The position numbers and the translations under genes were made by a program. The notes beneath the pieces were generated by a model. The model was not told the origin of the DNA. It ran no database searches and worked only from the letters and a program-made list of their open reading frames with translations. A DNA stretch of 64,000 nucleotides from Oopsacas minuta (taxonomy: Eukaryota; Animalia; Porifera), in assembly GCA_024704765.1 (NCBI GenBank), contig JAKMXF010000022.1, forward strand, positions 511,055 through 575,054, in the 5' to 3' direction. Shown here piece after piece: positions 21,855-43,500 of the stretch (position 1 is its first letter; every line of letters starts with the position of its first letter).

Positions 21855-22908
21855 AAATATTTATTATTATTGTAGTTCATTTTGATATCAGTTTCAATTA
21901 AAATTATTCTCTAATTAAAGACAATGAATATATTTGGAATCAAGAGAGGCTAATAGTATTCTCGCAACACGTCCACACACCTTTCTATGCAATTGAGTTA
22001 TTTCCAAGTTGCAATTATTCACTCTACAGATCAGTGTTATCCGATGATGACCCACAAAGTTCATGCCATGTATATGCCACACTCTTGAATATAGATACAG
22101 TACGTTGAGCGTTATTAATATGAAGGTCTCATGAGTCAGGAAGACTTGATGTATACATTTAGATAATGATTGCTATAAAAACCTTTGATTTTGACATTTA
22201 TTTGTTATTTATTACAGGTACATTCATCCACAAACAAACCTTTGCATTACTTCAGCATATTTCTTTGTACGAATACTCTCTAAAATATTCACTAAGGAAT
22301 TGCAAATTTCATCAAAAATCTATTTTGTATACGGATATTTATTTTTCCAAATACCTTTGCTCCAATAACTTAATTAATAAACATACACCATTGAATTCTC
22401 CTTACAATAGAGTCAGATATCCTATCACCCAACCCATACATAGGACCATTCAATAATCAACTAACAACCAAATTAATTACATGTTATGTCACAGCCAATT
22501 AGTGTGGTAATGTTTTGTGGAGCAATATCATGTCATGTGACCTATTCTAGCGAGTTCTCAAATACTCAAATAACAAGAAAATATGCTGTCAGTCTACCAT
22601 ATATCATATTATCCTATCGTATTTCATGTGTTTTCAACTGCCCATATAAACCCTAATTCTGCTCATTTATTCAATCATTCTGATCTCTTATCTATCTTTT
22701 GAATCTGTTATTATTTCGGTGAGTTTATTAAGACTAATGATATGAATTGAATAATTCCAAATTATCACTACAGTTTACAAAACCAATTGAACCTCGTGTT
22801 ACGCGTTTTTACGCGATTTTAATTAACTGCCTTTTTGAATATTTGTTTTTTGGAGATTTGATAATTTCTTTACATCATTTATGTATTTCAAATATTTAGG
22901 AAATTTCT

Positions 22909-25900
22909 ATGAAGTCAATTATCCTTCTTGCTCACTGCATTATCTTGCTTGTGTATTACTTTGTAAGTTAAATATTATTCATATTTACACCTTATCATAC
23001 TCATATCAGTCCTGGAGACAGGCTGGAGTCAATTACTCTTAAATGTAATATATTACACTTACAATTCGATTCCAAAATAAGATATTAGACCTTTCCTGGT
23101 AACGGAAAAAAATATACTAATAGACATCAATGAGATTATTTCATGTTAGGGATGTGACTTTTCACTGTACATATTATACTTAACTTTTCGCAGGAAGGAA
23201 CATTGGGGACAGGAAAGCTTACTGTTAACTACAAAACCTACGATACAAAGGGGAGAGATTCTGGAGGATCTAATTGCGACTACTGTATCTTCTGTTACAG
23301 TCCATGTGATCCAATTTTCCGAATTTGTTTGAGGTTTGGCCACACCACTTCTACATTCACTTGTAGCTCTAGTTCAGTAGTAAATCCCAAGATTACTTCA
23401 GGAGAGTATTCAAGTACAGATTACGTGACGTTTGGTACAAGCATCGGAGGAACAACTAATCCTGTTGTCTATAACACTGACAATACATTTGATGTAAGTA
23501 TTTATTATAATGATTAACTTCTATCTAAATGTGCACTAGTTTTAATTACATTATTTCCATTTTTTTAGGGAAGATTTGAAATATCAGTAATTTCAGTTGA
23601 TGAAGATGGATTCTTCAGTGGAGATGATGATATAGATACTACAATCATTCGAATTACAGCTACGAAGCGAACATCTTTTACAGCTACATTATATTACGAT
23701 GGTTTACGTAGCTCTTATAAAACTAGCACTGGTCTCCAGTACAAGTTTATTTGTGATTCTAACTACTATGATACATATTGTACTGAGTTCTGTCAAGCTA
23801 ATGACGATACTTTCGGTCACTACACTTGTAATACTGTGACTGGATCAAAAATTTGTAACACTGGCTATACTGGAACAGATTGTGATATTGGTAAGTACAG
23901 GTATCTTCTTATTTGGCTCTTATCGTTGCTATGTAACACAATGTGAACTATACAGTTACTGCTTTATAAATTAAGATTATACAGAGCATTAGTACTACTA
24001 AATTATTGAAGTACGCTCCACATATTCAAAGGTAACACACTTCATCTTTTTAATATAAGTAGCTATGATTGTACATTATGGCACAATCATAGATGCTTAA
24101 ATTATAAATAAACCATAAAACAATTATTTCAATAAAAGAAGTACACAATACGTACTTAAGTTTTAAAAATTATATCCAATATAGGAATATGTTCAACTGG
24201 ATACGAATGGGATGCAGTTAGTCACAGCTGTAAGGACATAGATGAATGTAACCTGAACACACATCAATGTGACCAGATATGTACCAATAATGTTGGAAGC
24301 TATGTGTGTTCTTGTATGACTGATTACTACTTATCCACAGAGACAGTTTGCAGTATTGTGACGTTTGATACGTTGATATCAGGTTCTGCATTATCCAGCA
24401 AATCTCTACAGATAATTTGGCAGACAACTTACGTTCCAACCGATCACACCGCATCTCTCACATATAAATTGTATTATCGTGACATTACATTCTCCACACC
24501 CGCGTTTATAGAATATGGAGAAACTGACCAGTTACAACAAGATATCACTGGTCTACTTCCTCACAGGCACTACGAGCTCTATGTCAGTGCCATTGGAAGT
24601 CTAACTAGTGAAGATTCCAATATTGTGACAGTGAAAACAGATGAAGACATACCGAGTATGGCTCCAACCATTTATATTTTAACAGTTGATAGTGCCACAC
24701 AGATCAGTATCTCCTGGTCTGCTCCTAGTATTGAATCACAGAATGGTATTATAGATAATTACGTCATTCTAATCGACAGTACAGAGCTCACTGTAAGCGC
24801 TTCTTCTACTTTCTACACAATTACAGGTCTGAATCCATACACAGAATACACACTCCAGATAGCAGCTGCTACTTCTGTTGGAACAGGACCTTACAGTACT
24901 TCATCCACAACCACTACCCTTGAGAGCACTCCTACATCTTCTCCTCTCCTCTCTGTCACTACCATCACTGAGACTACCATCACACTCACACTCAGCCCTC
25001 CCACTGATACAGACACCCTCAATGGTGTCATCACCTTCTATACTGTCACATACACAGGTGTCAATGTTGACACTACTACACAGACTGTGATGGTTACACC
25101 ATCCACTACAGACTATCTGTTAGCTGTTGATTATATAGTGAATGGATTGCAAGAAGGTGTTTCGTACGAAATTCAAGCATCTGTGAGTACAAGTGTGGGA
25201 AGTGGTCCTAACACTGACGTCATTACTGTGACAACTAATGAGATAGCTCCTACTGGCACTCCTCAGAATATTGAATTAACCACCATCATGACTACCAGCC
25301 TGTCTTTAAGCTGGGACTCTCCTTCTCTGAGTGAACAGAATGGAGTTATATCAGGATACAGGTTATCATATGAGGGAATTTACCATGATACTGAACTGAA
25401 GGGTATATCTGTAGCAACAACTAGTGCCACGATAGATAATCTTAAAGAAGGTAGTGAGTATCATATCCACATCTGTGCAGTTAATAGCATGGGAACAGGC
25501 CCTTGTATTTCCGTAAATGGGAGAACATTAGAAATTCTTCCTTCTGGCTCTCCAGCATTGTTTAAAGTCGAAAACAGAGCTTCTAATTCTCTTTCATTTT
25601 CATGGATACTACCTCTTATCGAGGAACGAAACGGATATATCATAGCATTCCGCTTGGTAGCAACTGATCAGCAAACTTTTGCTGTTTCTGAAGCTGAAGT
25701 TAGCGGAACGGAATTTTTCTATCAGTTCACAGGTTTGGAAGAACACCGTGAATATTCTATATTGATTCAAGCAGGAAATTCAATCGGCTACGGACCAACT
25801 ACTGAGTTGATAGTTTCAACAACTGAATCATCTCCTGGAGAAGCTCCATTAAGCTTTACTGGTGTTCCTACAACTAACAGCATTGCGTTGTCGTGGGTAG

Positions 25901-28900
25901 CTATCCCAGCTGATCAACACAATGGACAGCTGACTTACTACGAGATTACGTATTTCACTCAAGCAATGTTTCTTATACACACTCACGTTCATACGAACGT
26001 ATCCGTATCAGAAGTAACATATACTGTAGCTGGCCTAGAAGAATATGTAGAGTACTATTTGAGTATTAGAGGTTATACTTCAGTTGGACCAGGTCCATAC
26101 TCCCCAGAGATAAATGTCAGAACTCTAGAAGCTCTACCATCTAGTCCTCCTACTGATTTCACTGTGTCTGTGTTGTCGGCTACTGAAATACAACTTGAAT
26201 ACGATTATCCTCTTGCTATTGATCAAAATGGAGCAATAACAGCATTTGACATTAGTGTATCCTCTAATACTGATTCTCTTCCACAGATATTCTCTACAGA
26301 TCTAACAAGCTACACTATACAATCTCTCCATCCTTTCACTAGCTACTCCATTCAGATCAGAGCTATCAATTCTATTGGAGCTGGTCCTTACACTCAAGTT
26401 ATCATAGCTATAACCAACCAAGCACTGCCAGTTGATGCACCAACACAACTCACTCTCTCACTGGTCACACATAACTCTGTCAACTTCTCCTGGAATCCGA
26501 TCTCTTCCTCCTCCCTCAATGGAGAGTTTGTGAGCTACACTGTTCTTGTCACTGATACTCAATCAACAACTTCCTTCTCTCACACTTCCATCTCTCCTAA
26601 CACTATCATCCCTAACCTCACTCCCTACACAAATTACTCACTATCAGTAGCAGTTATCAACACTCAAGGAACAGGTCCCTACTCCTCTGATCTCACCTTA
26701 TCTACTCACCAGTCATCTCCCTCACAAGGACCTGAGATACTCTCTATTGATGACATAACTGACACCAGTGCTGTTGTACAGTTCTCTTCTATTCCAATAG
26801 ACCTACAGAATGGACCCATTATATCCTACACACTCTCTCTCTACATCAGTACAGACAGTGTTCCTGTTACCTCGGTTACCCTCAATACCCTCTCACACAC
26901 CTTAACCAATCTACTTCCATACAGAAAGTACACTGTAGAGATAATAGCTACCAACTCAGCTGGTACCAGTCCTCCTTCTTCAGTGATCTTTATGACAATA
27001 GAATCTGTACCAAGTGGTCCCCCCACCTCCATCTCTGCCACTCCTCACTCCACTTATGTCACTCTGCGATACCAGCCTCCTGTAGCGTCTAAACAGAACG
27101 GAATTATCATTGGTTACTCAATTCAATTTGGTACTTCTACCAGTACTACCACGTATACTACAGACTTAACTGAATATACTATCAATGATCTTGAAGAATA
27201 TACAGAGTTTCAATATAGTATTGCTGCTTCTACTAGTATCGGGATTGGACCTTACAGTACAGTATTATCGATAAAAACTCTTTCAGCTCCTCCCTCTGTA
27301 GCTCCACAGAATGTAACAGGTACACCTGAATCATATCAATCTATATCCGTCAGCTGGAATCATATTCCTGATATCCATCAGAATGGAGAAATCACCAGTT
27401 ATATTGTGTACTATGGGGGGCAAGAACATGACACTAGTGTTGGAAAGAAGACAGTAGATGCCACAAATACTGATACCATCATTTCCCCTCTGAAACCAGA
27501 TGAGTTGTACTCTATTATTGTTGTAGCTGTTAATTCTGGAGGTATCAGCCCTCTATCTGTTCCTATCTATATCAGAACTTTCGAGGGATTACCAACTGCT
27601 GCTCCTACTGAAATAACTGTCGTGCCTACGTCATCATCTTCATTTACGGTATCTTGGGTTAGAATTCATCCTCAGCATCACAACGGATTGTTATTGTCTT
27701 ACGAAGTTGTATACCAAGGTTCATTATATGACACAGCTACCTTGAGTATAAGAACTGATGTTGATGCTACTTCTGCAGTAGTTACTGATCTACATCCTGC
27801 AGTAGAATACACTGTGTATGTGTATGCATTGAATGCAATTGGAAACGGCCCAGATTCTGATTCAGCAACTGTCTTATTGCTAGAATCAGTTCCTAATGTA
27901 GCTCCTTCTATTACACACTCTTCTTCAGGGCCAACTTGGATATACGTAGTCTGGCAAGAAATTGATGGAATAAATCGTAACGGAGTTATTACACATTATG
28001 AAATTCGATACACACAATCTTTGGACACTGAATACGTATACTTTATTGTCAGTGCTCCTGTCCTTCAAGCTAATATAACAGGCTTAATATTGGATACATT
28101 TTATACTGTAGATATACGAGCATATACCATTATAGGACCTGGACCTTACTCTTTAGAAGTATCCCTACTCACAATGCATCATGTATGTACAGTGTGTGAT
28201 AACGGTAACTGTGTTGAAGAGTTTGGTGAAAGCATCTGTCAGTGTATTCCAGGTTTCACAGGTGATATATGTGATACAAACATTGATGAATGTCTTGGTG
28301 CTAGCTGCGATCATGGTACTTGTATGGATGGAATCAATAGCTTTACTTGTGAATGTGATAACGGTTATCAGGGACAGCTGTGTGGCTTGACGACTGCCAC
28401 ACCTGTATGCGGAGAAGAAACTTATCTCAATTTCGAGTGGCCTAATACAGCTTATGGCAGTACAGCTGTTCTTCCTTGTTCTGATTCTCACTCTCTACTC
28501 TTCGGTGATGCAAGTCGTATATGCTCAGATGCTGGCTCCTGGTTGTCAGCTGACGTGAGTAATTGCCTGAAGAAAGCATACTCTGATTTACAGGAGGGTC
28601 TGGATAACGAAGATGACGAAATTCCCACTCCTGACGAAATTGTTGAGACCGTTACATATCTTCAGGATCTTTTCTGTGTAGATAATTCGGCCTCTTTATT
28701 CCCAGCTGAGATTCAAATCTTGATTAATGTTATAGTGAATATCATTGATTCAATAGACCAACAGGATGAGTCTATTCGAGTAGAACTACTTCCTCAGGTA
28801 ATGCCTGGCCTTCTGTGTATGCTATCTGGCATACTCGACACCAAGAATATTGAGTTGTTACAAACTAATTCTACAATAGCGATTTCAATTAACGAGCTCT

Positions 28901-30102
28901 TAGAGAGAATTGCTAAGTTAAATGCAGACAATTACGACTCCACTAATTCAGATCCGACACTCTTCTCAACAGAAAATATATACTTGTACATTACTCCTCT
29001 GACTAATGGACAATCTATCATAATACCAGATTACGAGCTGTCAGCTGTCCAAGATACAGGTCTATATCCAAACAGTATATCAATCCCAGAAAGTGAAGTA
29101 TCAAATCTGTTCGCCGATTCAAACGGAGAAGTGCCTGTAATTGCTGTTCTATTTAGTAGCTACTTGGGTCAAGCAATTGGTACTTCTTCTCTAAGCTTTG
29201 GACTAGATTCTACTTCCACCATCAGTACAGGTGTAATCTCTGTACAGAATAGTTTGGGAGAAGATCTCACTTTCTCTTCTCCTATTACGCTAACTTTAAC
29301 ACTATTCACAACTCCTGAATCAAATCTTGAATATACTTGTGTGTATTGGGACAACATTAAACAAACTTGGACTTCTTCTGGATTGAGCTACACTGGAGGG
29401 AGCACGGACTATGTCAGCTGTTCCAGCACTCATGCTACTAGCTTCTCTGTACTCTCATATACTGTATCTATTACAGATGCCCAAAAACAACGTACTTTCT
29501 ATGCTTTTGCAGGAGCTGGTGTTGTACTCTTGTGTCTGGTATTAGCACTAGTATGCTGCTTTTTGTGCGTTTGTATATGTCTCGTGCGTCACAGAAGGAA
29601 AAAGCATTTGATTGCTCTACGTAGAGAGTCTACTCAACCTCTACGACAACCAGATCCCAATTTTCATAATCCATTGTATGGTCTTGTTTCTGAAGAATTT
29701 GCTAAAGGTGGAAGTTTGAAGAAAGGAGACTCACTACAAAAATTCGAAAATCCTTATGAATATGCTTCTGTTAGTTTGCTACCAGACGAATGGGGAATCA
29801 ACAGTATAAATCCAGGATTCGAAATCTCAGGTTGTTATTCTGATGTTAACCCAGGATTACATGTTGATACAGATAACCCTTATTCAGAAATAAAAATAGA
29901 TAATTCTGCGAATCCATTCACTGAGGTGATTAACACTGAACATATTGACAAACCCTCAGGGATAGATTTCAACCCATTTTTAATAGACCCTGAACTTCGT
30001 TATCCCACGGACGTAAATCATATTGTGAATCCTACATACATGTCCATGGCTCCGCATACTGAACCCCAATCATCTGTTCTTTCTCATGAAGATGATGTAT
30101 GA
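22909..30102 (+). CDS. Chimeric Notch-ligand/adhesion-GPCR-like single-pass protein: SP-MNNL-DSL-half EGF-cbEGF-13xFN3-2xEGF-HormR-GAIN/GPS-1TM-NPxY tail; exons 22909-22962, 23194-23493, 23569-23890, 24185-30102 (~2197 aa)
   Basis: All introns are GT-AG with phases 0,0,1 and join in frame. The DSL reads CDSNYYDTYCTEFCQANDDTFGHYTCNTVTGSKICNTGYTGTDC and the MNNL includes CDPIFRICLR and NPVVYNTDNTFDGRFEISV. The GPS reads CVYWDNIKQTW...CSSTHATSFSVL. There is one hydrophobic helix (29497-29586) followed by RHRRKK. Confidence 0.88.
24472..25370. repeat. Inverted-repeat block 1, near-identical to 40578-41476 (FN3 repeats 1-4 of both receptors)
   Basis: Direct reverse-complement match by eye with only scattered substitutions. 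Confidence 0.9.
26131..27318. repeat. Inverted-repeat block 2, near-identical to 35695-36882 (FN3 7-10 vs FN3 17-20)
   Basis: Direct reverse-complement match (~1.19 kb); the translations are almost identical (LPSSPPTDFTVSVLS...PPSVAPQNVT). Confidence 0.9.
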
Positions 30103-30428
30103 TGATATCTGAACGTATAAATGTTTTTACCCAAACTTTTAACGATTATTTTAATTAGTTTTATCTTTTGTATATCTTATGGTTTTCGTAAGCTTTTTTT
30201 TAATCTCCCCTGTACTTGTATATTTGTATAGAATATTATATAAATTCCTATTTATGAAGTGTGTTAAAATTCTCTCAATTAATGACAATTAATATAATTT
30301 CGCATTTCCATTTTACGTGAATATTTCTCTTCCATGTTTGTTTATTGATTTGTAAATTTGCCAGTATTATCAATTTTTATATCATAATTTATTTCAATGT
30401 AATTCTCGTGTTCTTTTATTCAGGAGCT

Positions 30429-31295
30429 ATGATTAGCGATGTAAAGGGAAACGAAGTTAACGGTCAAATTACCATAAATCTAACTGAAAAATCTAGAATT
30501 TCTTACTTACCCCGACCGGTTCGTTGTTTTAATCCTGAACACAAATCCCGTCCCTTCACCAGTAAAGATCTACAACAAATCGGAAGGAGGCCCTCTTCTT
30601 CTCCATTCAATCGGAGGGTGAGCGGCCTCAGTCCGGATGAACATATTCCTGGTACCCTGCAAGGTTACAAAGTCTTCCACTCTTCAATGGATGTCTCGCA
30701 TATTCGTTCTAGGATAGGTTCATTCGAAAACATACTATATCAACCACAAGATAGTAACGTTAAAATATTCAATAAAAATCCATCCTATTCTCATATACAA
30801 ACCACGATTCCATCACCAACAATTGTCCCTAATTCTAAGCCGGAGAAACCTGTAAAGATTTTCAATCAGAAATTTGATTATTCACATGTTAATCCACTTG
30901 TGTCATATCGTGAAAATGAGCAGTACACTGCAGGAGGAGGTAATGTAGCAATTACGAGCCAAAAACTAAACTTTAGCGAGTTCGCGAAACATAAAATTGA
31001 TTCCAAATCCAATCACATTCCAAAGATCCCTACCGTATCTATTCCAATTCAAAAACTAAATTTTAGAGATTTAGCAACTTCTAGAATTGACTCAAAAAGG
31101 GATTTGGCTCTCAAAGAAACGCCAAAAAATACTCGACATCTAATCGATCTTCTGACTGTGAGCCTCCCAGATCTACGCATAACTAAGGAAACTACGTCAG
31201 AGCCTCCCGATCACTTTGATATCCTTACTACCACGCCTCCTCAGGGCTACTCTACTGAACCAAAACAACCGAAACCTTTAGATAACGAATTATGA
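30429..31295 (+). CDS. Tau/MAP2/MAP4-like microtubule-binding repeat protein (~288 aa)
   Basis: Basic Pro/Ser-rich N-part, then ~31-aa repeats: SHIRSRIGSFENILYQP..VKIFNK, YTAGGGNVAITSQKLNF, AKHKIDS, QKLNFRDLATSRIDS. There is a probable 5'UTR intron at 30352-30423. Confidence 0.72.
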   Translation: MISDVKGNEVNGQITINLTEKSRISYLPRPVRCFNPEHKSRPFTSKDLQQIGRRPSSSPFNRRVSGLSPDEHIPGTLQGYKVFHSSMDVSHIRSRIGSFENILYQPQDSNVKIFNKNPSYSHIQTTIPSPTIVPNSKPEKPVKIFNQKFDYSHVNPLVSYRENEQYTAGGGNVAITSQKLNFSEFAKHKIDSKSNHIPKIPTVSIPIQKLNFRDLATSRIDSKRDLALKETPKNTRHLIDLLTVSLPDLRITKETTSEPPDHFDILTTTPPQGYSTEPKQPKPLDNEL

Positions 31296-31590
31296 AGTAT
31301 TCATTATAAGCAAGTAATTTGATAAATTATTTATATTTACCAATTAATTTCCTTCCAAAATCTACCACTTGAAACCCTTAGTGAATAGAGAATATATATA
31401 ACTTCATTAACTTGTATATTTAAAGATTTCGAGGGTTCACATACGTACTTCAACATTATAATCAACAACTTTCTATACTAAATATACAAAATAATAACTA
31501 TATAGCGAATGCAGGAATATAAATCCACTGCTGCATACACATAGGGGAAGAAGTTAATATAAAAGAATCTAATATACGCAATTACGTATA

Positions 31591-34500
31591 TTATACATCA
31601 CTGTTATCTGCGTTATCAGTACCCTCTGTTAGATTGAGCTTGCCTACAGCCATGTAAGATGGGTTCTCAAAACCGGTATCAGCTTTAAGTAACTGAGCTC
31701 GGGGTAGAGCTGAGTACGTGGGGTTTTCGTGTGCAAATCCTTCGTCAACAAACTGAGGCATATCATCTTGTGGAGATACTCCAGTATCATTTTCGGGATT
31801 AATCATATCTTCTGTACATTCCACATTAACGTCATTAGCATTAGCATTCTCTTGTTTAGCTATAGGTTGATTATGACCATCAAAACGAGGCTCTGAGTAA
31901 ATATTACTTTCATCTTTATCTACATTTGCAGAGAAAGGATTTACATGTGTTTCAGCACTCACTTGTAAATTTGAAGCCTCAATTCCTAAAAATGGATTAG
32001 CAGTAGAGTCTTCATTGATCTCCATATAAGGATTGTCGTATCCAGCTGGATCATGGTGAGCACCTGATATCTTCATTGACTGGTAGGGGCTAACCAGAGG
32101 AATTTTTGTGGGTTCCTTTGCACAATGAAAACTTTCTTTGTGATTAAGTTTATCAATATCTTCTGGATCCAAGTTGATCGCATTGTAGAGAGGGTTAAAG
32201 TAGTCGCTATTAGCTCCAGGAGGACTCAATTGGTAAGTGAAATCTTCTGAGACCGATAACAGACGATGTTGTGAAGGTCTTCTGGTGTCATTCCCAAGTT
32301 GTGGATCCTGGTTGCTTGTATCTGGTGTGTTTTTCTTAATCCTGAATACCTTCGATCTTATGAGTTTGATTGGCAGTACAATAGAGAGTAAGAAGACTAC
32401 ACCTTGTGTTATGTAAGTTATTGTGAAAATCCATTTGAAGAAAATGAATTGAATGTACATATTAACAATAATCAATATCCAAGGTGCGGACAGCAGAATA
32501 GATAATATGACAAGTCCAAACATTGCTCGTTTTGCTTGGTTATGCCATTCCTCTTTAAGCTTTGACGTTGAGATACGACAAACTAGAAAGAACGACATAA
32601 CAACATCTATAACAGCTATTGCTAATATCGGTCCAACAATCATCCAAAATGTAGTACTGTCTTTAGATGTCCAGCAGTATGAATCAAGCACTCCATAGTT
32701 AATCCAGTTGATACCACTTGTAGCTGCTGTGATGATCAATGGAGTAACCCAACCAATTGGTATGAAAATGAAGAAAGTACGAATCAGTCTATTCCTTGCG
32801 AATAGCATGTATATCGATTGAACTGCAATACAGAAGATCCAACAAACTGAAGCCAGTGTTGAGTATTGGAATGCTATAGTGAACAGCTTACATGTTATTG
32901 GTATTGAAGTAATGGGGTGGAGGCCAATAATGCAGAATATCAAAGCTAATATCAGTGATATTGCGAGGTTAATATGGCAGATTAGTTGATCACTTCTCAA
33001 GAGATCCTTCCCTAGGATTAGTAAGAGAATTACACCTGTTACCAACGAAATAAAAGATATGATTCCTAAGGTGTAGATAGCTATTCTAAGTATCAAATGC
33101 TGTTCTTCTGGAACACGAGGTTCTGGCTGTAATGAGAATAATATAGCAAAGCTAGTTGTGTGAGTGCTATAGCAAGAAATTGTATGTTTAGATCTTTCTG
33201 ATAGATAAAGACCTTCATCACTCCACTTAACTCCATCCCAAGCTACACACGATGCTACCTGGCTTGTGTTGTAAGGATCGAATACCCAGTATTCGAGAGT
33301 GATAGGAGAAGTAAAATTAAGTGGTTGTCCTAGACTCGTTTGTATGGTTATTACTCTAGTACCGATAGGAGAGAAACCCAATGTCGTGCTTTGAGAGTGA
33401 GCACCCATTGCTTGACCCAAATAGCGACTGAATACAACAGCAATTACAGGTACTTCTCCATTCGATTTGGAGAACAGATCGGATACCTCACTATGTGGGA
33501 TTAATACGTTGTCTGGATAGAGACCTGTATCTTTGACAGCTGATAGCTCATATTCTGGTAACGTGACAGATTGTCCATTAGTCAGAGGAGTAATATACAA
33601 GTGAATATTTTCTTCTGAGAACAGTGTGGGATCAGAATTTGTAAAGTTGAAGTGCATAGCATTCAACTTTGCTATTTTCTCTATTACTTCATTGATATCG
33701 ATTGCTTTGAGGGAGGAATTTGTGAAAGTGAATATTTGTAGATTTCCGATATTCACAATGCGCGATATTATACAGAGTAAGCTAGGGGTCATTTGTGAAA
33801 TCATCATTGCTTGTGTTGAATTATCCTGAGCTTCAATTGATATCATTAATTGAGTCAAAACGCCTGTGATAACTGAGATTTCGTAAGGATAGAAAGTAGG
33901 TTCAATTGACTCAATAATCTCAGTCTGATTGGTACATATCTCTTGAGAAAGACGATCCACTAGATCAATAGAAATAATGGGATCTAGGTATCCTGTAACT
34001 TTGACATAATGGTTAAAATGGTAATCAAGATCGCGAAAGGTTGGACGAGCACAATCAGAAATATCCAAGTCTGCCCAATCTCCATCTGGTTTACAATATC
34101 TCGTTGCATTTCCAGTCAGCCCTTTTATTGCTAAACCACAAGGTATTTTCCTGGAATTTCCATACCCAGTTTCTTCCCAATAAAATCCAGCTAACTCTTG
34201 TTGTTTGCAAGTATCTCCGTTGCTTGGAATCTCGCAGTATATGCCCTTGAAACCAACATAACAGTTGCATTCATAAGATTCAAGTTGATCAAAACATTCT
34301 CCATATTTACACGAGTTTTTTCTACAATCATCAATGTTGATGCTACAATTCTCTCCTTCATAACCAGGCTCACAAGTACAAGTATAAGAATAATTCTCCC
34401 AAAGACATGATCCGTGTAGACAAGGATTTGCTACACAGGTGTTAAAGAATTGACAAAAAGTCCCACTATAGTTATCTGTACAATTACATGTGTACTCTTC

Positions 34501-37500
34501 TATTCCATCTACACAGACAGCTCCGTTAAGACAAGCATTATCTCCACAATCATCTATATTATAATCGCAATACTCTCCTGTATATCCCCTACCACAAACA
34601 CAAAGATAGCCGTTAACTTCATCTATGCATTCGCCTCTGTCACATTGGTTCTCTTCACAATCATCAATGTCTGTAAGGCAATTTAGCCCGGTGTACCCAG
34701 CAGCACATTGACATCGATAAGCTTTACTATCATCAGGTAGACATACTCCATTATTATAACACGGGTTGTAGAAATACGTATTAAAGAATTCGTAGCAGTT
34801 AATCAATGCTGGAGCTGTGGTGCCTGCTAAGAAGGTAGAATAAGGACCTGATCCTACAGCTGTATATCCTCTAACTCCAATCTCATACTCCGTACCTACC
34901 TCCAAATTGGCTAGATGCGTATTAAGTATTTCTCCAGTAATATTTTGATACAAAGTCGAATATACATCACTGGTTTGAGGAGATTTACTGGAATATTTCA
35001 CTTCATATGCCGTGATTATTCCATTTCTTTCACTGACAATTATACCCAACCATACTATGTATATTTCTGTTTGAGAAGCAACTGTAATCGCTGTAATAAC
35101 AGGTGCGCCACTGGGATTTGATTCAGGTAAGAGAACATTGACTCTTGGCGAATTTGGTCCGTTACCTACACTAGTGTATCCCCGAACGAACAGCTGATAC
35201 TCAACAGCTGGATGTAGATCTTCCAATACAGCTTCAGTAACATTTCCAGGAGTAGTGAATTTGTATTGGCTTGAATCGAATGTGCTGTCACTTTGGTATA
35301 TTATCTCATATTGGGTAAGAATTCCATTCGTTTCGTCCGGAGGAATGGCTGTCCATTTAGTACGAATAGATGTGGCTGTTATTGAAATTGCGGTAATTCC
35401 AGTAGGAGCTACTGAGGGGTAACCTTCAAAAGTGCGGGCGATTGTTGGAGGATCTGAATTAGGGCCAGAACCTTGATTATTTTCGGCTGCTACAGTAATT
35501 TGGTAGGATTCGTAAGGTTTGAGATGTTCGAGAGTTGCACTAGTACTACTCCCTGATTCAACTTGTTTCCTTTCACTCGTTTCGTATTGTTCTCCTTGGT
35601 AGTAAACAATGTAACTTATGATTTCTCCATTATGATGGATTTCAGGAACAGGATTCCAGCTGACGAATATTGATTGATAGGATTGAGGGATAGCTGTCAC
35701 ATTCTGTGGAGCTACAGAGGGAGGAGCTGATAGAGTTGTTACATATAATTTTGTACTGTAAGGTCCAATCCCGATACTAGTAGAAGCAGCAATACTATAT
35801 CCAAACTGAGTTAGCTCTTCAAGATCATTGATGGTATATTCAGTTAAGTCTGTAGTATACGTAGTAGTGCTGGTAGAATTACCAAATTTAATTGAGTAAC
35901 TAATGATAATTCCGTTCTGTTCAGAGTATACAGGAGGCTGGTATTGCAGAGTGACATAAGTGGAGTAAGGAGTGGCAGAGATGGAGGTGGGGGGACCAGT
36001 TGGTACAGATTCTATTGTCATAAAGATCATTGAGGAAGGAGGACTGGTACCAGCTGAGTTGGTAGCTGTTATCTCTACAGTGTACTTTCTGTATGGAAGT
36101 AGATTGGTTAAGGTGTATGAGAGGGTATTGAGGGTAACGGAGGTAACAGGAACACTGTCTGTACTGATGTAGAGAGAGAGTGCGTAGGATATAATGGGTC
36201 CATTCTGTAGGTCTAATGGAATAGGAGAGAACTGTACAACAGCACTGTTGTCAGTTATGTCATCAATAGAGAATATCTCAGGTCCTTGTGAGGGAGAAGA
36301 CTGGTGGGTAGATAAGGTGAGATCAGAGGAGTAGGGACCTGTTCCTTGAGTGTTGATAACTGCTACTGATAGTGAGTAATTTGTGTAGGGAGTGAGGTTA
36401 AGGATGATAGTGTTAGGAGAGATGGAGGTGTGTGAGAAGGAAGTTGTTGATTGAGTATCAGTGACAAGAACAATGTAGCTCACAAACTCTCCATTGAGGG
36501 AGGAGGAGGGTATCGGATTCCAGGAGAAGTTGACAGAGTTATGTGTGACCAGTGAGAGAGTGAGTTGTGTTGGTGCATCAACTGGCAGTGCTTGGTTGGT
36601 TATAACAATGGTAACTTGAGTGTAAGGACCAGCTCCAATAGAATTGATAGCTCTGATCTGAATGGAGTAGCTAGTAAAAGGATGGAGAGATTGTATAGTG
36701 TAGCTTGTTAGATCTGTAGAGAATATCTGTGGAAGAGAATCAGTATTAGAAGATACACTAATGTCAAATGCTGTTATTGCTCCATTCTGATCAATAGCAA
36801 GAGGATAATTGTATTCAAGTTGTATTTCAGTAGCCGACAACACAGACACAGTGAAATCAGTAGGAGGACTAGATGGTAGAGCTGCTAATGTAATATTCGT
36901 GATTAATGCTGTATATGGACTAGGGCCGATGCTATTCTTTGCTCTGACTTGTATGGAGTAGCTAGTATCTGGATGGAGAGATTCTATTGTAATTTGTGTT
37001 TGATTTGTAGAATATATCTCTTGAAAGGAGTTAATAGTTGAAACTAATCTGACGTCATATCCAGTTATTTGTCCATTCTGTTCTAGTACTGGAGGGGGTA
37101 GCCATTTCGCTATAATTTGATATGCTGTTATTACGGTAAGTTTTAAATCAGTTGGGGGACCAGATGGTAATGATTGTTGTGTGGTAGCACTAATGTATCC
37201 AGTGTAGGGACCAGGACCGATACTGTTGATAGCTCTTATCTGTATAGTATATTGAGTGTTTGGCTGGAGATTTTGAAAGGTGTAGCTAGTTTGTGTTGTG
37301 GAGTAGATCTGTAGAGTTGAATTCGTTGATGAATGGACACTGAACTCATACCCAGTGATTTGTCCATTCTGTTCTAGAACGGGAGGAGGTCCACATGTAC
37401 TTAGTATTTGAGTAGCTGATAAAGTGACGAGTTGGAAATTAGTTGGTGTGCTAGATGGGATAGCTTGTTTGGTCCTGACACTAATCTCAACGGAGTAAGG

Positions 37501-40500
37501 ACCTGGTCCGAAGGAGGTGTAGGCTCTGACTTTTAACTGATAAAGCACATCTTCGTGGAGATCATATATCATGATATAAGTCTGTGATGTTGATACATTT
37601 GTCAATACACTATGTGTATTTGTCAGGTAGTTTGAGAGTACATAGTACTCTATCTCGTAGTAAAGTAGCTTTCCATTATGAAGATGAATCAATGGCTCTG
37701 ACCAGGACAGTTTGATGGTAGTCTCAGTTGATTTGTATGTTAAGTTCAAAGGTGCGCCGCCTGAAACATCTTCTGACGTCACTACGGTGAGTATTCTTGT
37801 ATAAGGGCCAAACCCGATAGCATTTCTAGCTCGAACTTGAAGCTTGTATTCATGGAACTCTTCAAGGTTATCGAACTTGTAAGACAACGTATATTCGCTA
37901 ACAATATCTTCATATATATTGGTATCGTGTTGTTGTCCAACAGCAATAACCTCATACCCAGTAATGACTCCATTTTGCTCCTCAAGAGTAGGAGGTTCCC
38001 ATGATATTGTAGTGCTTGTAGAAGTTATTGCTCTAACCTGAAGGTTCGTAGGAGCCTCTGTAGGTGTTACTTCAGAAGTTGTGCTGTATATCTGAGCACA
38101 GGGACCGAATGCAATAGTATATGCACATATGGAAATGTCATACTCAATGCCTTCTTCAAGATTTGAGAGTCTATAACTGGTATATGGAGTAGAAATAGTT
38201 TTATCATTTATATCAATAGTTACCCCGCTGTAGGTTATGGAGTAAGTTGAAATGTTTCCGTTTTGTAGATTTATATTTGGAGCTTCCCAACTGAGTATAA
38301 TGTATGTTGTAGAAGCGATTGCCTGTACATTTTGAGGTGGACCTGAAGGTGGTGCTTGCTCTGTTGTTACGGTTACAGGCGTTGAGTATGGGCCAGATCC
38401 AGGTTGTGTATTTGCCCTTATTTGAATAATGTAATCTGTATAGGGATGCAAGTTGGTAATAGTGATGGCATTGATTGATCCTTGAACGGATAATACATAG
38501 GAGCTATGAACTGTGTCTACTTTGATTTCGTATTCAGTGAGTACGCCATTTAGATCTGCCATGGGGGGGTCTAGCCATTCCACTATTATCTCAGTATCAG
38601 AGACATATACTATACTGACTGCAGTCGGAGCGGCGCTTGGAGGGGCTTCAAGTGTCCGTACATACAATACTGTAGAGTAAGGTCCTGGCCCAAATGAAGT
38701 GTAGGCTCGTACTTGAATTTCAAAAAGTTCGTTCTCATGTAAGTTAGGGATAATAATTCTTAATTCCGTCTCAAAGAGGCTGTTGTTTGCACCAGATAAG
38801 ATATCAATGTACTTCACTTCGTATTTAGTAATTACACCATTGTGATCAGGAATTGGTGGAGTACTCCAGATAATGAATAGTGAAGTTGTACTAGCAATTG
38901 CGTTTACATGCTGTGGTGCAGAGGATGGAGCAGCATCATTTGTAATTACTGAAATATTTTGTGTGTAAGGTCCATATCCTGCACTGTTTGTTGCTGACAT
39001 GCTGACATAATAAAGATGTCCTTCTTCAAGGCTACTCAGTGTATATGCTCTCAACGTAGAATTTGTATCTATATGATATACAGATGAATCATGCTGTAAT
39101 CCAACCACAACAATCAAGTATCCTATAATTGCTCCATTCTGTGTGTTTAAACTTGGCGGATTCCATGAAATTAGAAGAGATGTCGAACCGCTTGGCAAAA
39201 CTGTAAAGTCAGATGGTGGAGCGGTCGGAGGGATTGCCTCAGTAGCATTATACACGGTTAAATACGGCCCATTACCAACATATGTGGTGGCGCTTATAGA
39301 AATCTGATATTGATTCCCCTCTTTCAAATTGTTGAGGGTTGCATGTCTGTATGTTGTACTTAAATTCCTAGTTTCTGTATCCAATCCTATGCCTCTGTAT
39401 TTTACAATATACCCTGTGATTATTCCATTTTGTTCTGTCTCATCGACATCCTGCCATCTTATAGAAATGCTCGTAGTAAATATTACAAACTCAACATTAT
39501 TCGGTGTGCCTGAAGGAGCAGCTTGATACGTCTCAAGTGTTAATGGTACAGTGTATGGACCAGCCCCAGGACTAGTCTCAGCCCTCACTTGAATGGTGTA
39601 GTTGGTGTAAGGATGTAGGTTAGAGAAAGTATAAGAGTTACGAGAGGCTGCCAATAAATAGTCTCTTTGATAAGTATTATCCTCTGAATGTATCTTCAGC
39701 CCGAATCCTGTTAACACTCCATTTTGATCAATTAATGGTGGACTCTCCCATTCAAAACTGATGTCGGTAGCAGAAAGGACGTTACTTTGAATGTTTATGG
39801 GAGAAGCTGAGGGAACATCTTGTAGTGTTCTGATAGCTAATTGGGCAGAGTACGGTCCTGGTCCTATAGCAGTGTATGCCCTTATTCGGAATAAATAAAA
39901 TTCATATTCTTCTAGATTGGTAAAATTGAAATTTAAGTCAGTCGTGTTTACTAATGTATGGCTATTTGAAGTACTTCCAAGATCTTCGTAAGCGATTTCA
40001 TAATTCGTAATATCACCGTTGTGATCAACTATAGCAGGTGCAATCCATTTCAAATATATCCAAGTCTTTCCGAATTTGTCTGCCAAGTTTTGTGGGGCAG
40101 AACCTGGCACAGATTCTAAAGTAGACAGTATAATGGGACTAGTTCGAGGTCCATATCCTATTTCGTTATATGCCCTAATGGTTACTTCATAGGAGTGGCC
40201 TTCTTCTAAGCCACTGAGTGTATACTCGCGGCTATTTTCGCTTACATTTTTGGTGTAAATATTTGAGTCATGCTCTCTTCCTATTACTTCAATCTGGTAA
40301 CCCTTTATTACTCCGTTCTCTGCCTCAGCATTGAGAGATGACCATTTTACAGAAATGGAAGTTGAACTATCTGACCTAACCACGACGTTAAGAGGTGTTC
40401 CAGTTGGAGCTATCTCAGCTGTTGTTTTGATAATACTTGTTGATGAACCAACACCCGCACTATTTATTGCTGATATTTCAATTAGATACTCCGAGCCTTC

Positions 40501-43500
40501 TTCAAGATCAGTAAGAGTGGTAGATGTGGTCGTGACAATGACAGATTTTACTTCAGTATCAATGGTAACTCCATTATATGATATCTTGTATCCTGTTATA
40601 ACTCCATTCTGTTCACTCAGAGGAGGAGAGTCCCAGCTTAAAGACAGGCTGGTAGTCATGATGATGGTAAATTCAATATTCTGAGGGGTGCCAGTAGGAG
40701 CTATCTCATTAGTTGTCACAGTAATGACGTCAGTGTTAGGACCACTTCCCACACTTGTACTCACAGATGCTTGAATTTCGTACGAAACACCTTCTTGCAA
40801 TCCATTCACTATATAATCAACAGCTGACAGATAGTCTGTAGTGATTGGAGTAACCCTGACAGTCTGTGTAGTAGTGTCAACATTGACACCTGTGTATGTG
40901 ACAGTATAGAAGGTGATGACACCATTTAGGGTGTCTATATCAGTGGGAGGGCTGAGTGTGAGTGTGATGGTAGTCTCAGTGATGGTAGTGACAGAGAGGA
41001 GAGGAGAAGATGTAGGAGTGCTCTCAAGGGTAGTGATTGTGGATGAAGTACTGTAAGGTCCTGTCCCAACAGAAGTAGCAGCTGCTATCTGGAGTGTGTA
41101 CTCTGTGTATGGATTCAGACCTGTAATTGTGTAGAAAGTAGAAGAAGCGCTTGCAGTGAGTTCTGTACTGTCGATTAGGATGACGTAATTATCTATAATA
41201 CCATTCTGTGATTCAATACTAGGAGTAGACCAAGAGATACTGATCTGTGTAGCACTATCAGCTGTTACAGTATCAATGGTTGGAGCCATACTCGGTATGT
41301 CTTCATCTGTTTTCACTGTCACAATATTGGAATCTTCACTAGTTAGACTTCCAATAGCACTGACATAGAGCTCGTAGTATCTGTTGGGAAGTAGACTAGT
41401 GATATCTTGTTGTAACTGGTCAGTTTCTCCATATTCTATAAACGCGGGTGTGGAGAATGTAATGTCACGATAATACTCCTTATAAGAGAGAGATACGATA
41501 TATCCGGTTGGAGTGTAAGTAGTCTTCCATTCAAGATTTATGGCACTGCTTGATGTTACAGAGGCTTTCGCATTAACACTGAAACCTATAGGCTCACAGG
41601 TTATATCAGTCGGTTGGTAGTAATCAGTAGTACAGCTGCAGTCGTAACTTCCTATTGTGTTAGTACAGCCCTGATCACATTCATCAGTTTCGAGGCTACA
41701 CTCATTTATGTCCGAACAAACTCCTGCTACCTCTAAGGTATATCCAGTCATACATTGGCAAGTATAACTCCCGTCAGTGTTTGTACAATAGTGCTCACAT
41801 ATATCTGTATTTTCATTACATTCATTGACATCTTCGCACTTGTCCGGCTCGGCAAGAATCGTCCTGTATCCGGTAAAACAGGAACAACTGTAATCCCCGG
41901 CTCCGTCGATACATTCTTGTTGGCATATATCTGTCTCCTCCGTACATTCGTCAATATTATCACAGGTTTGGGTAACAGAATTCCATCTGTACCCTGAGGA
42001 ACAATATTCACAATGGTAGCTACCATCCGTGTTTATACACTTTTCAGTACAACCACCATTATTCGTGTCACATTCGTTTACATCGTTACATTGTGTTCCA
42101 ACGTATGTGTAACCAATCTTACAAGTGCAGGTGTAACCTCCTACACTGTTATCACACTCCTCATTTGTACCACAAGGATCTGTATAGCACTCGTTAATAT
42201 CTATGCAGTCAATTCCAATTCTCTCATACCCAACTCTACATAAACACGAGTAGCCTCCATCTGTGTTTGTACATAATTCAGTTGCACTGCAAGGGTCTAT
42301 ACCGGTAGTACATTCATCAATATCTAAGGGTTATATTTTCATTAATTAATGTTTCTTGTTCAGGTGCGTCACGTCTGAAGCGCGCTAGTTAAATTTAAGA
42401 TTAGTTGTTTTCAGGTCTCTCAGCCTGCAATCGTGAGATGTGTGATTTAGTATAAGTTTTTACGAAAAGATAAGGATACGTAGTAAGTGAATAAGCTGGA
42501 CAAAATGCAGCTCCGGGATCGTGATCCCTATGCTGCGTCGCCATAAGATGTGACCATAGATTATTAGAACTACGGTTGTCAAGCACTTGTTATAACATTT
42601 CACGTCGATTACTATTTCCAGGGACGGCGCAAACGGTCAAGTTATCGCCTGGCCACTTTTCTGCCATGACAGTGCCTGACCGCTATTTAGTACCGTCTGC
42701 CGCCCTTGATTTCTATCAATTTCTAGTAAATCCTGAATAACATTTCTTCAATATAATCAAAATACGGAAGACCCATGCGGCTGAATAACTACCTCCCTCT
42801 TAGTCTAGCCAAGCAAAGGAGTTGGAAATTGTTCTGAATGATTTTTCAGGTCTAATTAGTGACAAGCAACAAATTTTAATTTCCCTTAATTAAGTAATAC
42901 TTGTCCGTCTGTTCGAAAACAGGGAAGCCTCAAATATATTATTATCCACATTAGCTTCATTGAATCGCAATGTCCCTACCACTCCTGCCTGGAAACACAT
43001 TCACAGATCCTTCTAAAGACAAGTTCCACGTGTCTCAGTCGCTTGGCTATAAGAACGGCTACCCGCTCACTAAGCTCTCGGCTAGAGGGATAGGAGGGGA
43101 GATACACGCAGTCACGAAATCAGACCAAATGTCAGCTGCTGAATTTGACGAGATAGCACAAATGAAGCCTACTCTTACGTACGGAGACCCTGTACCTGAT
43201 CACCCAGTTCAGTTCGTACCAGCTCATGTGGCTTTTGATAAGAGAGTTCTCCAATTCAAAGCATTCTTCAATCAGACAGTACGCGAATCAGCTGTTGAGG
43301 ATTATAGAGTGCGTTTCGTGAAAATTTACTACTACCTGGAAGATGACAGCATTTCAGTAGTGGAGCCTGTGGTGGAAAATTCTGGGATTCCTCAGGGAAA
43401 ACTTATAAAGAGACAGAGATTGCCAAAAGATGAGATGGGGCAGATTTGGCATTGGAAGGATTTGAACATAGGAATCGATGTAAGTCTATACGGAACTAGC

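What the first reader, a model, noticed from the sequence alone, without database searches (positions are those of the whole stretch)
22909..30102. Notch-ligand / adhesion-GPCR chimera: MNNL-DSL head on a GAIN-GPS stalk with one TM
Seen: three small exons absent from the ORF track splice in frame onto the 5.9-kb exon. They encode a signal peptide, a complete MNNL/C2-type domain and a DSL domain, followed by cbEGF, 13 FN3, 2 EGF, HormR, GAIN/GPS with a Stachel-like TSFSVL, one TM and an endocytic-motif tail. Known: MNNL-DSL defines Delta/Serrate ligands, which activate Notch by endocytic pulling; GAIN domains self-cleave and separate under force. As recalled, DLL1 has phase-0 introns after codon 18 and at FTWP|GTFSL, and a phase-1 intron after the DSL. 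This gene has the same three (codon 18; NTFD|GRFEI; after DSL), so the head looks like a real Delta gene 5' half. Inference: a Notch-ligand-like molecule on a long FN3 rod with a built-in force-release or shedding point, linking two mechanosensitive signalling systems.
Basis: partly seen in the sequence, partly recalled or inferred. Interest (0 to 1): 0.92.

Follow-up and report, generated by a model that had tools for sequence, protein, structure and literature searches.

The report
Delta-tipped one-helix GAIN adhesion protein
A glass-sponge gene, confirmed by RNA, puts the Notch-binding tip of Delta on a 13-unit rod that ends in the self-cleaving hinge of an adhesion receptor that has lost six of its seven membrane helices. 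I found no paper describing this hybrid, and its function is untested.

Summary
Exons 22909-22962, 23194-23493, 23569-23890 and 24185-30102 splice in frame to a 2197-aa protein. It is identical to an annotated Oopsacas minuta protein (NCBI 'PTPRQ-like', UniRef 'Delta-like'). RNA contigs show all three junctions plus a 5'UTR intron, and no splicing past the stop codon.

Tests support every proposed domain: signal peptide, C2/MNNL, DSL, cbEGF, 13 FN3, 2 EGF, HormR, GAIN/GPS (H-A|T), one TM helix, and a tail with NPxY and NPF motifs.

New findings here:
- The tail is homologous to the post-7TM tail of the adjacent FN3-rod adhesion GPCR, so the gene is an aGPCR derivative that lost six helices.
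- The 1TM family forms one clade.
- The Delta head, with the same two intron positions, is present in all three subclades, including a syntenic ortholog in another assembly.
- No other DSL-head protein that I examined carries GAIN, 7TM or FN3 domains.
- I found no paper describing the combination.

Notch binding, GPS cleavage and force release remain inference. Two of the five known DSL contact residues are replaced here, and the contact face is degenerate in the paralogs.

The scan had already flagged this architecture on paralogs elsewhere in this genome (s1-248613, s1-266701).

Verdict: a real, new variant built from known modules.

Novelty: the reader's 'would reduce novelty' condition is only weakly met. 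The protein is in public databases under misleading or generic names, but I found no paper on the architecture.

The parts
22500..22718 (+). non-coding leader exon (left end not determined)
   Evidence: RNA contig of X4 covers 22500-22713 and runs on leftwards; joint 22718/22900, GT..AG
22900..22962 (+). exon with start codon (ATG 22909); signal peptide, 18 codons
   Evidence: in-frame stop upstream in the spliced leader
23194..23493 (+). exon: first part of the C2/MNNL domain (residues 19-118)
   Evidence: Pfam MNNL; aligned to Delta/DLL structures; RNA joints
23569..23890 (+). exon: second part of C2/MNNL plus the DSL domain (DSL = residues 180-224, nt 23752-23886); ends in phase 1
   Evidence: Pfam DSL E 2e-14; six invariant Cys plus YY, DD, GHYTC, GxKIC motifs; RNA contig bridges to 24185
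24185..30102 (+). 5.9-kb last coding exon
   Evidence: one open frame, in phase with exon 3
24235..24345 (+). calcium-binding EGF
   Evidence: Pfam EGF_CA 30.5 bits
24364..28161 (+). 13 FN3 domains (residues 286-1551)
   Evidence: Pfam fn3 E 1.6e-142; 13 repeats by iterated HMM
28186..28386 (+). two EGF domains
   Evidence: Pfam EGF/hEGF/EGF_TEN; sequence
28402..28569 (+). HormR domain
   Evidence: Pfam HRM 26.0 bits; family profile aligns from position 2 with HormR+GAIN of ADGRL3, BAI3 and LPHN1
28678..29454 (+). GAIN domain with GPS; putative cleavage H1975-A1976|T1977 at nt 29431-29439, followed by a Stachel-like TSFSVL
   Evidence: Pfam GAIN 29.2 and GPS 35.8 bits; profile and fold matches to solved GAIN domains; motif conserved across the family
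29497..29586 (+). the only transmembrane helix (residues 1997-2026, Cys-rich), followed by RHRRKK
   Evidence: hydropathy scan; sequence
29587..30102 (+). cytoplasmic tail of 171 aa with NPLY, NPYEY, NPYSEI, NPF x2 and NPTY; stop at 30100-30102
   Evidence: motifs; conserved in paralogs, orthologs and in the 7TM relatives' tails; RNA depth ends by about 30140, with no joints
31594..41751 (-). adjacent convergent gene: cbEGF + at least 22 FN3 + EGFs + GPS (H-T|T) + 7tm_2 adhesion GPCR. It is the closest 7TM relative and has no Delta head
   Evidence: Pfam; no MNNL/DSL upstream; 43% identity in HormR-GAIN; tail homology

Best explanation
SHOWN. This is a real, transcribed gene of the glass sponge Oopsacas minuta. 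It encodes a 2197-aa type I membrane protein with this order of parts: signal peptide, Delta-type C2/MNNL + DSL head, cbEGF, 13 FN3, 2 EGF, HormR, GAIN/GPS, one TM helix, and a 171-aa tail rich in NPxY and NPF motifs. It belongs to a multi-copy family (three paralogs in Oopsacas, and relatives in at least four other assemblies) that forms one clade.

INFERRED FROM HOMOLOGY. The family descends from an FN3-rod adhesion GPCR like the one lying tail-to-tail next to it. An in-frame loss of six of the seven helices kept the GAIN domain, one helix and the original C-terminal tail. The 5' exons of a Delta-type ligand were joined on at a phase-1 boundary in front of a cbEGF.

INFERRED MECHANISM. The GAIN domain (H and T of the triad kept, Ala at -1) probably cuts the protein into two pieces that stay associated. 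One piece is a long N-terminal fragment carrying the Delta head some tens of nm from the membrane. The other is a short Stachel-TM-tail stub. The head binds an EGF-repeat partner on an apposed membrane, most likely Notch, which this sponge has. The tail's NPxY and NPF motifs recruit the endocytic machinery, so tension runs through the rod and the GAIN hinge. The hinge then acts as a force-limited release point: it either lets the pull reach Notch or sheds the head.
For: Gene model and expression.

Domains.

Head homology over both domains: 1140 library hits, 152 at E<=1e-10, aligned over residues about 4-208; solved Delta/DLL1/DLL4/Serrate/Jagged chains, E 1e-19 to 1e-7; AF2 model pLDDT 92.6 whose 24 best PDB matches are all Notch-ligand C2-DSL structures.

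HormR-GAIN: the family profile aligns end to end with ADGRL3, BAI3 and LPHN1, and the fold search ranks CELSR1, BAI3, BAI2 and LPHN1 GAIN structures first.

Origin from a 7TM receptor:
- The tail, from RHRRKK on, aligns to the neighbour's post-7TM tail (E 4e-6) while the GPS aligns about 285 residues upstream of it.
- The same NPLY/NPYE/NPYSEI/NPF blocks are present in the 7TM relative P0011.
- The 1TM clade has 100/100 support against both 7TM relatives.
- The neighbourhood 1TM gene / Tau-MAP gene / DM10 gene / 7TM gene recurs in L007 and L008.

Head ancestral to the family: MNNL and DSL exons with identical intron positions lie upstream of the big exon in L001, L002 and L007, one from each non-Oopsacas part of the tree.

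Pathway context: Notch, one canonical Delta and the cleavage enzymes are reported in glass sponges (PMC5684314; PMC10280926). GAIN domains detach at a few pN (PMC10607210).
Against: No binding, cleavage or force data exist.

Of the five Jagged1 DSL residues known to matter for Notch binding (F199, R201, R203, D205, F207; PMC3415683), this protein keeps F, D and F but has Q and N for the two arginines. The paralogs and relatives are more degenerate still, so the canonical Notch face is not under family-wide constraint.

The DOS-type EGF1-2 that follow the DSL in most ligands are absent.

The GPS triad is H-A|T (H-T|T in the neighbour), not the consensus H-L|T/S (PMC11697300). The AF2 model of GAIN subdomain B is of low confidence, so cleavage competence is open.

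The tail comes from the aGPCR, not from Delta, so Mib/Neuralized-type ligand endocytosis cannot be assumed.

The RNA evidence comes from assembled contigs of one sample.
Confidence: 0.5

Rival explanations
1. Adhesion protein, not a Notch ligand. The C2-DSL tip is used as a generic lipid- or EGF-binding adhesive module, as other N-terminal adhesive domains are used on aGPCRs. The protein mediates or senses contact in the syncytial tissue without touching the Notch pathway.
For: The known Notch-contact residues of the DSL are only partly kept here and are degenerate in paralogs. Many invertebrate proteins with C2-DSL heads have non-ligand architectures, such as multi-DSL arrays and 'draper'/MEGF-like names. 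A candidate Delta-head 7TM aGPCR exists in another assembly, which fits the head being one more shuffled adhesive module. The Notch-ligand C2 domain binds lipids as well as receptor (PMC5538765 abstract).
Against: The whole C2-DSL unit, with all cysteines and the YY/DD/GHYTC/GxKIC motifs, is conserved at 50-60% identity across the family. The only experimentally established partner of this module is Notch.
Confidence: 0.3
2. Partner or modulator of the 7TM relative. Like the Drosophila Cirl 1TM isoforms, which bind Cirl 7TM and tune mechanosensation, this single-helix protein pairs with the neighbouring FN3-rod aGPCR (or others) and adjusts its signalling. The Delta head only adds a ligand specificity.
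For: 1TM forms of aGPCRs are produced and functional in flies and mammals (bioRxiv 10.1101/2023.01.11.521585). The 1TM gene and its closest 7TM relative are neighbours in the window, and the same neighbourhood recurs in other assemblies. They share rod type, HormR-GAIN (43% identity) and tail motifs.
Against: Nothing shows co-expression beyond both genes being covered in one RNA run. The 1TM family has diverged as its own clade with its own head, which suggests an independent function.
Confidence: 0.12
3. Notch-like receptor working in reverse. Binding of the head to a partner and the resulting tension strip the N-terminal fragment at the GPS. The remaining stub of about 20 extracellular residues then becomes a substrate for intramembrane proteolysis, and the NPxY/NPF tail is released as the signal.
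For: The GPS lies 20 residues before the single helix. The tail is conserved from the 7TM ancestors. Gamma-secretase components are reported in glass sponges (PMC5684314). That short stubs are preferred gamma-secretase substrates is established knowledge and was not tested here.
Against: Purely inferential. No nuclear-targeting or transcription-related motif was seen in the tail.
Confidence: 0.08

Closest known systems
DSL-family Notch ligands (Delta, DLL1/4, Serrate/Jagged)
   Same: Signal peptide, N-terminal C2/MNNL domain and DSL domain in the same order. Homology covers both domains. Type I single-pass topology. Two intron positions are shared with a canonical Delta gene.
   Different: No DOS/EGF1-2 and no EGF array after the DSL; instead one cbEGF, 13 FN3, 2 EGF, HormR and GAIN. 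Both arginines of the DSL Notch face are replaced. The cytoplasmic tail is of aGPCR origin.
Adhesion GPCRs with a HormR-GAIN module (ADGRL/latrophilin, ADGRB/BAI, CELSR), and specifically the neighbouring sponge FN3-rod aGPCR at 31594-41751(-)
   Same: cbEGF-FN3 rod-EGF-HormR-GAIN/GPS ectodomain, Stachel-like TSF(S/A)(V/I)L, and a homologous C-terminal tail.
   Different: One helix instead of the 7tm_2 domain, so there is no G-protein-coupling unit and no target for a tethered agonist. A Delta head has not been described on any aGPCR in the literature I could search.
Single-helix aGPCR isoforms (Drosophila Cirl 1TM, mammalian GPR126 1TM; bioRxiv 10.1101/2023.01.11.521585)
   Same: aGPCR ectodomain with GAIN, anchored by one TM helix.
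   Different: Those are splice isoforms (intron retention) of a 7TM gene with an alternative intracellular region. Here the 1TM form is a separate, duplicated gene family that keeps the ancestral tail.
PTPRQ (the name NCBI gives this protein)
   Same: A long array of FN3 domains and one TM helix.
   Different: No phosphatase domain was detected. The name reflects the FN3 rod only.

Membership tests
DSL-family Notch ligands | N-terminal C2/MNNL domain | tested here: met
   Pfam MNNL 21.2 bits, just under the 22.5 cut-off (paralog P0006 25.2). phmmer to solved Delta/DLL1/DLL4 aligns from residue about 34 on. AF2 + Foldseek: C2-DSL structures rank 1-24.
DSL-family Notch ligands | DSL domain with six cysteines and conserved core motifs | tested here: met
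   Pfam DSL 53 bits. Cysteines are invariant and the YY, DD, GHYTC and GxKIC motifs are present.
DSL-family Notch ligands | EGF repeats (DOS-type EGF1-2 in most) directly after the DSL and making up the stalk | tested here: not met
   One cbEGF and then 13 FN3. No EGF_DL_JAG or JAG1-like_EGF2 hits.
DSL-family Notch ligands | Notch-binding face of the DSL (Jagged1 F199, R201, R203, D205, F207; PMC3415683) | tested here: inconclusive
   This protein has F, Q, N, D, F (3 of 5). Paralogs have Y, I, E, S, S and relatives have other variants. These columns also vary among 86 aligned heads.
DSL-family Notch ligands | binds and trans-activates Notch through ligand endocytosis | not testable with these tools
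   Needs binding and reporter assays. Notch is reported present in the species (PMC5684314).
Adhesion GPCRs (class B2) | GAIN domain containing a GPS | tested here: met
   Pfam GAIN 29.2 and GPS 35.8 bits. The family profile aligns end to end with ADGRL3, BAI3 and LPHN1. Foldseek ranks GAIN structures on top. The GPS cysteines, both tryptophans and H, T, F, L are invariant.
Adhesion GPCRs (class B2) | autoproteolytic triad H-L|T/S (PMC11697300) | tested here: inconclusive
   H-A|T here and in all 1TM relatives and P0011; H-T|T in the neighbour. The His and Thr are kept; position -1 is not Leu. The model of subdomain B is of low confidence.
Adhesion GPCRs (class B2) | seven-helix 7tm_2 domain after the GPS | tested here: not met
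   There is one hydrophobic helix only and no 7tm_2 hit. The stop codon follows a conserved tail. There are no RNA joints, and depth falls to zero after about 30140.
Adhesion GPCRs (class B2) | HormR domain N-terminal to GAIN (a subset of the family) | tested here: met
   Pfam HRM 26.0 vs cut-off 26.2. The profile alignment to HormR+GAIN crystal constructs starts at position 2. pLDDT is 85-93 over the first 50 residues.

The most novel reading that the evidence does not exclude
The protein is a working bridge between two pull-operated systems. Its Delta head engages Notch on an apposed membrane, and the cleaved GAIN hinge sets the maximum force or duration of the pull (a mechanical fuse). When the hinge lets go, the head stays on the Notch cell and the one-helix stub signals back through its NPxY/NPF tail. 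One contact event would then be read in both cells. It would be a natural example of a Notch ligand with a built-in force limiter.
Probability: 0.15. Interest if true: 0.9.

Novelty: new variant of a known kind. Interest (0 to 1): 0.66.

Why it matters
Both Notch activation and aGPCR activation depend on piconewton pulling. They have been studied as separate systems, and synthetic biologists have had to engineer chimeras to compare their force thresholds. Here an early-branching animal has joined the ligand end of one system to the force-sensitive hinge of the other, and has kept the product in several copies across species. If the head binds Notch, the family offers a natural experiment on how ligand tether length (a 13-FN3 rod) and a detachable hinge shape Notch signalling.

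The family also shows a simple route by which aGPCRs become single-pass adhesion proteins: internal loss of six helices with the tail retained.

Even if the head does not bind Notch, the finding shows that the C2-DSL unit is a mobile exon module in sponges, and it corrects a misleading public annotation ('PTPRQ-like').

Tried and rejected
Rejected readings:
- Mis-joined neighbouring genes. Rejected: an RNA contig bridges the DSL exon and the big exon, and no alternative joints appear.
- Hidden downstream exons supplying TM2-7. Rejected: the stop codon follows a tail conserved in paralogs and orthologs; there are no joints in 28300-33800 and RNA depth is zero at 30140-30323; the next ORF is a Tau/MAP-type gene.
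- PTPRQ-like phosphatase. Rejected: no phosphatase domain.
- A Delta head on the neighbouring 7TM gene. Rejected: only cbEGF repeats lie upstream of its ORF, and its ortholog locus L008 also lacks a head.

Searches that led nowhere:
- The word-indexed homolog search with the head alone returned only the query itself.
- A search with the L004 HormR-GAIN-7TM exon found only unannotated ORFs, so a Delta-head 7TM protein could not be confirmed in any annotated proteome.
- A second canonical Delta gene for the intron comparison could not be fetched. Human DLL1 was not examined.
- The AF2 model of GAIN subdomain B is too uncertain (pLDDT 30-65) to judge the geometry of the cleavage site.
- The iterated FN3 HMM also hit residues 1813-1899 inside GAIN subdomain B. 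I treat this as contamination of the self-built profile, not a 14th FN3.
- The organisms behind the ENA assemblies (ERZ25071281, ERZ25069837, ERZ25072730, ERZ25766962, ERZ20067936) were not identified.
Full report
**Source and gene model.** The window is from the glass sponge Oopsacas minuta. The 2197-aa product of the proposed exons is identical to a public protein of that species, named 'Phosphatidylinositol phosphatase PTPRQ-like isoform X5' by NCBI and 'Delta-like protein' by UniRef.

The four coding pieces are 22909-22962, 23194-23493, 23569-23890 and 24185-30102. All have GTAAGT donors and pyrimidine-rich AG acceptors. The intron phases are 0, 0 and 1, and the joined frame has no internal stop.

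Of four public runs holding this DNA, three behave as genomic and one (X4) as RNA. X4 covers exons only and its contigs carry joints 22962/23194, 23493/23569 and 23890/24185, all GT..AG. One 561-nt contig spans the DSL exon and 166 nt of the big exon. In the spliced leader an in-frame stop lies 27 codons before the ATG, with no ATG between.

At the 3' end, RNA contigs run to about 30139, depth is zero at 30140-30323, and no joint occurs anywhere in 28300-33800. The expressed protein therefore ends at the stop at 30100-30102.

**Domains.**
- Pfam finds DSL (E 3.8e-14), MNNL (21.2 bits, just under the 22.5 cut-off; paralog P0006 passes at 25.2), cbEGF, fn3 (12 stretches), EGF, HRM (26.0 against 26.2), GAIN (29.2) and GPS (35.8).
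- Hydropathy shows only the signal peptide and one helix, 1997-2026, followed by RHRRKK.
- The 171-aa tail holds NPLY, NPYEY, NPYSEI, two NPF and NPTY.

**The head is a true Delta-type module.**
- Residues 19-227 hit 1140 proteins in the 1.8-billion representative library, 152 of them at E<=1e-10. Most alignments cover residues about 4-208, that is both domains.
- Against solved structures, the head aligns across C2 and DSL with Drosophila Delta (E 1.7e-19), DLL1, DLL4, Serrate and Jagged1/2.
- An AF2 model built on 86 aligned heads has pLDDT 92.6. Its 24 best PDB matches are all Notch-ligand C2-DSL structures, including the DLL4-Notch1 and Jagged1-Notch1 complexes; generic C2 domains follow.
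- All six DSL cysteines and the YY, DD, GHYTC and GxKIC motifs are present.
- Of the five Jagged1 residues that form the Notch-binding face (F199, R201, R203, D205, F207; PMC3415683), this protein has F, Q, N, D, F. Paralogs and relatives are more degenerate.

**The stalk is a true HormR-GAIN module.**
- A profile of the family's HormR-GAIN region aligns end to end with ADGRL3 (E 4e-14), BAI3 and latrophilin-1 constructs, and with CELSR1.
- The AF2 model is good for HormR and the helical subdomain A but poor for subdomain B (mean pLDDT 64.7). Its best PDB matches are nonetheless CELSR1, BAI3, BAI2, latrophilin-1 and GPR110 GAIN structures.
- The GPS reads C-x-S-(T/N)-H-A|T-S-F-(S/T)-V-L in every 1TM relative and in the 7TM relative P0011. 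The neighbour has H-T|T. The consensus triad is H-L|T/S (PMC11697300). The catalytic His and Thr are kept and position -1 is not Leu, so whether cleavage occurs is open.

**Origin.** The gene lying tail-to-tail at 31594-41751 (- strand) encodes cbEGF repeats, at least 22 FN3, EGFs, GPS and a 7tm_2 domain. It has no Delta head and is the closest 7TM relative in HormR-GAIN (43% identity).
- The tail of the 1TM protein, from RHRRKK on, aligns with the neighbour's tail about 40 residues after its 7tm_2 domain (E 4e-6). The GPS motifs align about 285 residues upstream in the neighbour but only about 55 residues upstream here.
- The same tail blocks (NPLY/F, NPYE, NPY(S/M)EI, NPFTE, NPF) occur in the 7TM relative P0011.
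- The simplest reading is an in-frame loss of six helices inside the single large exon. Which helix survived cannot be told.
- In a tree of the last about 900 ectodomain residues, the ten 1TM proteins form a clade with 100/100 support against both 7TM proteins. Only two outgroups were available and the root is at the midpoint.

**Distribution.**
- Oopsacas has three paralogs: P0001 (this gene), P0005 and P0006. All three carry DSL and GPS.
- Seven further members come from ENA assemblies of unidentified organisms, where only the big exon was called as an ORF.
- In three of those loci (L001, L002, L007), which together cover both non-Oopsacas subclades, tblastn finds the MNNL exon and the MNNL-DSL exon just upstream of the big exon. 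The breaks are at the same places (..F(D/N)|G.FEI and ..CDIG|).
- L007 is also syntenic with the window (1TM gene, Tau/MAP-type gene, DM10 gene). L008, the locus of the 7TM relative P0011, has the DM10 and Tau/MAP genes beside it and no head.
- The head and the 1TM state therefore predate the split of these taxa.
- Among the 150 best representatives of the head, I scanned the 19 longest and mid-length proteins. None has GPS, GAIN, 7tm_2 or FN3; they are EGF-rich ligands or multi-DSL arrays.

**Intron argument.** A canonical Delta gene of Lingula (L003) has introns after the signal peptide (codon 19-20) and at ..FDTWP|GSAF.., matching two of the three introns here. Its intron near the DSL end lies within ..CLPG|W.., about 9 residues earlier than the phase-1 intron here, and it has two more introns in the head. 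The claim that the head is 'a real Delta gene 5' half' is therefore supported for two positions. The third was not confirmed, and human DLL1 was not checked.

**Literature.**
- Glass sponges are reported to have Notch, one canonical Delta, Furin, ADAM10/17 and gamma-secretase (PMC5684314). The genome paper confirms the Notch core and does not mention this family (PMC10280926).
- No paper in the searchable library combines 'DSL domain' with 'GAIN domain', or 'adhesion GPCR' with 'MNNL'. A 2025 survey of aGPCR N-terminal domains that included the Oopsacas proteome does not mention DSL or MNNL (PMC12716839).
- Single-helix aGPCR forms are known as splice isoforms (Cirl 1TM, GPR126 1TM) that bind the 7TM form (bioRxiv 10.1101/2023.01.11.521585).
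- GAIN domains detach from the Stachel at a few pN (PMC10607210).

**Mechanism.** Shown: architecture, expression, homology of each module, descent from a 7TM relative and conservation of the fusion. Everything functional is inferred.

My preferred model is a long, probably GPS-cleaved, single-pass protein that presents a Delta head to an EGF-repeat partner on another membrane, most likely Notch. An endocytic tail supplies the pull and the GAIN hinge acts as a force-limited release point.

The main rival is that the head is just another adhesive module and Notch is not involved. The degenerate DSL face in the paralogs and a candidate Delta-head 7TM receptor in another assembly (L004) favour that rival. 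Other rivals are a Cirl-1TM-like partner role for the neighbouring 7TM receptor, and a reverse, Notch-like receptor role for the stub and tail.

**Earlier notes of this scan.** The same architecture had been flagged on two other pieces of this genome (s1-248613, followed up; s1-266701). These correspond to the paralogs I saw as P0005 and P0006. Delta-head aGPCRs had also been flagged (s1-235691, s1-266700). My results agree with those notes. They add the tail homology, the monophyly of the 1TM family, the conserved synteny and the cross-assembly conservation of the head exons.

**Verdict.** The structural reading is right and the functional reading is plausible but untested. It is a new variant made of known modules, present in public databases under uninformative names, and I found no paper describing it.

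Noticed in passing
L004:9001-14040 (also L005): In an ENA assembly (ERZ25072730), an intronless ORF encodes signal peptide + MNNL + DSL. It ends ..CDIG followed by a GT donor in phase 1. About 2 kb downstream, an AG acceptor opens in the matching phase onto a TSP3-like Cys/Asp-rich stretch + HormR + GAIN + 7tm_2 exon. This is a candidate Delta-head seven-helix adhesion GPCR without an FN3 rod. There is no RNA evidence.
   Followed up: partly
window 31594-41751 (-): A single 3386-codon exon encodes cbEGF repeats, at least 22 FN3, EGFs, GPS (H-T|T) and 7tm_2. More cbEGF-coding sequence lies upstream at 41752-42330. RNA word depth here is several times that of the 1TM gene in the same run.
   Followed up: partly
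window 30345-31295 (+); L007:12883-13743; L008:18470-19375: A small gene with Tau/MAP tubulin-binding repeats (Pfam E 1.3e-18) sits between the 1TM and 7TM genes. It stays linked with a DM10-domain gene (window 42970-44604) and the receptor genes in two other assemblies.
   Followed up: partly
window 21600-22718 (+): The RNA contig that supplies the non-coding leader exon of this gene runs on leftwards for about 890 nt. It would reach the 3' end of the upstream XPD/Rad3-type helicase gene (stop at 21854). This means either overlapping transcripts in a very compact genome or read-through.
   Followed up: no
window 24550-24591: Six clustered base differences occur in short, deeper contigs of runs X2-X4 but not X1. 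They are probably cross-laid reads from a paralog or a second allele in the first FN3.
   Followed up: no
P0006 residues 1-88: The public model of paralog P0006 starts with about 88 residues that look like a retroelement integrase core, placed in front of the real signal peptide. This is probably an annotation artefact.
   Followed up: no
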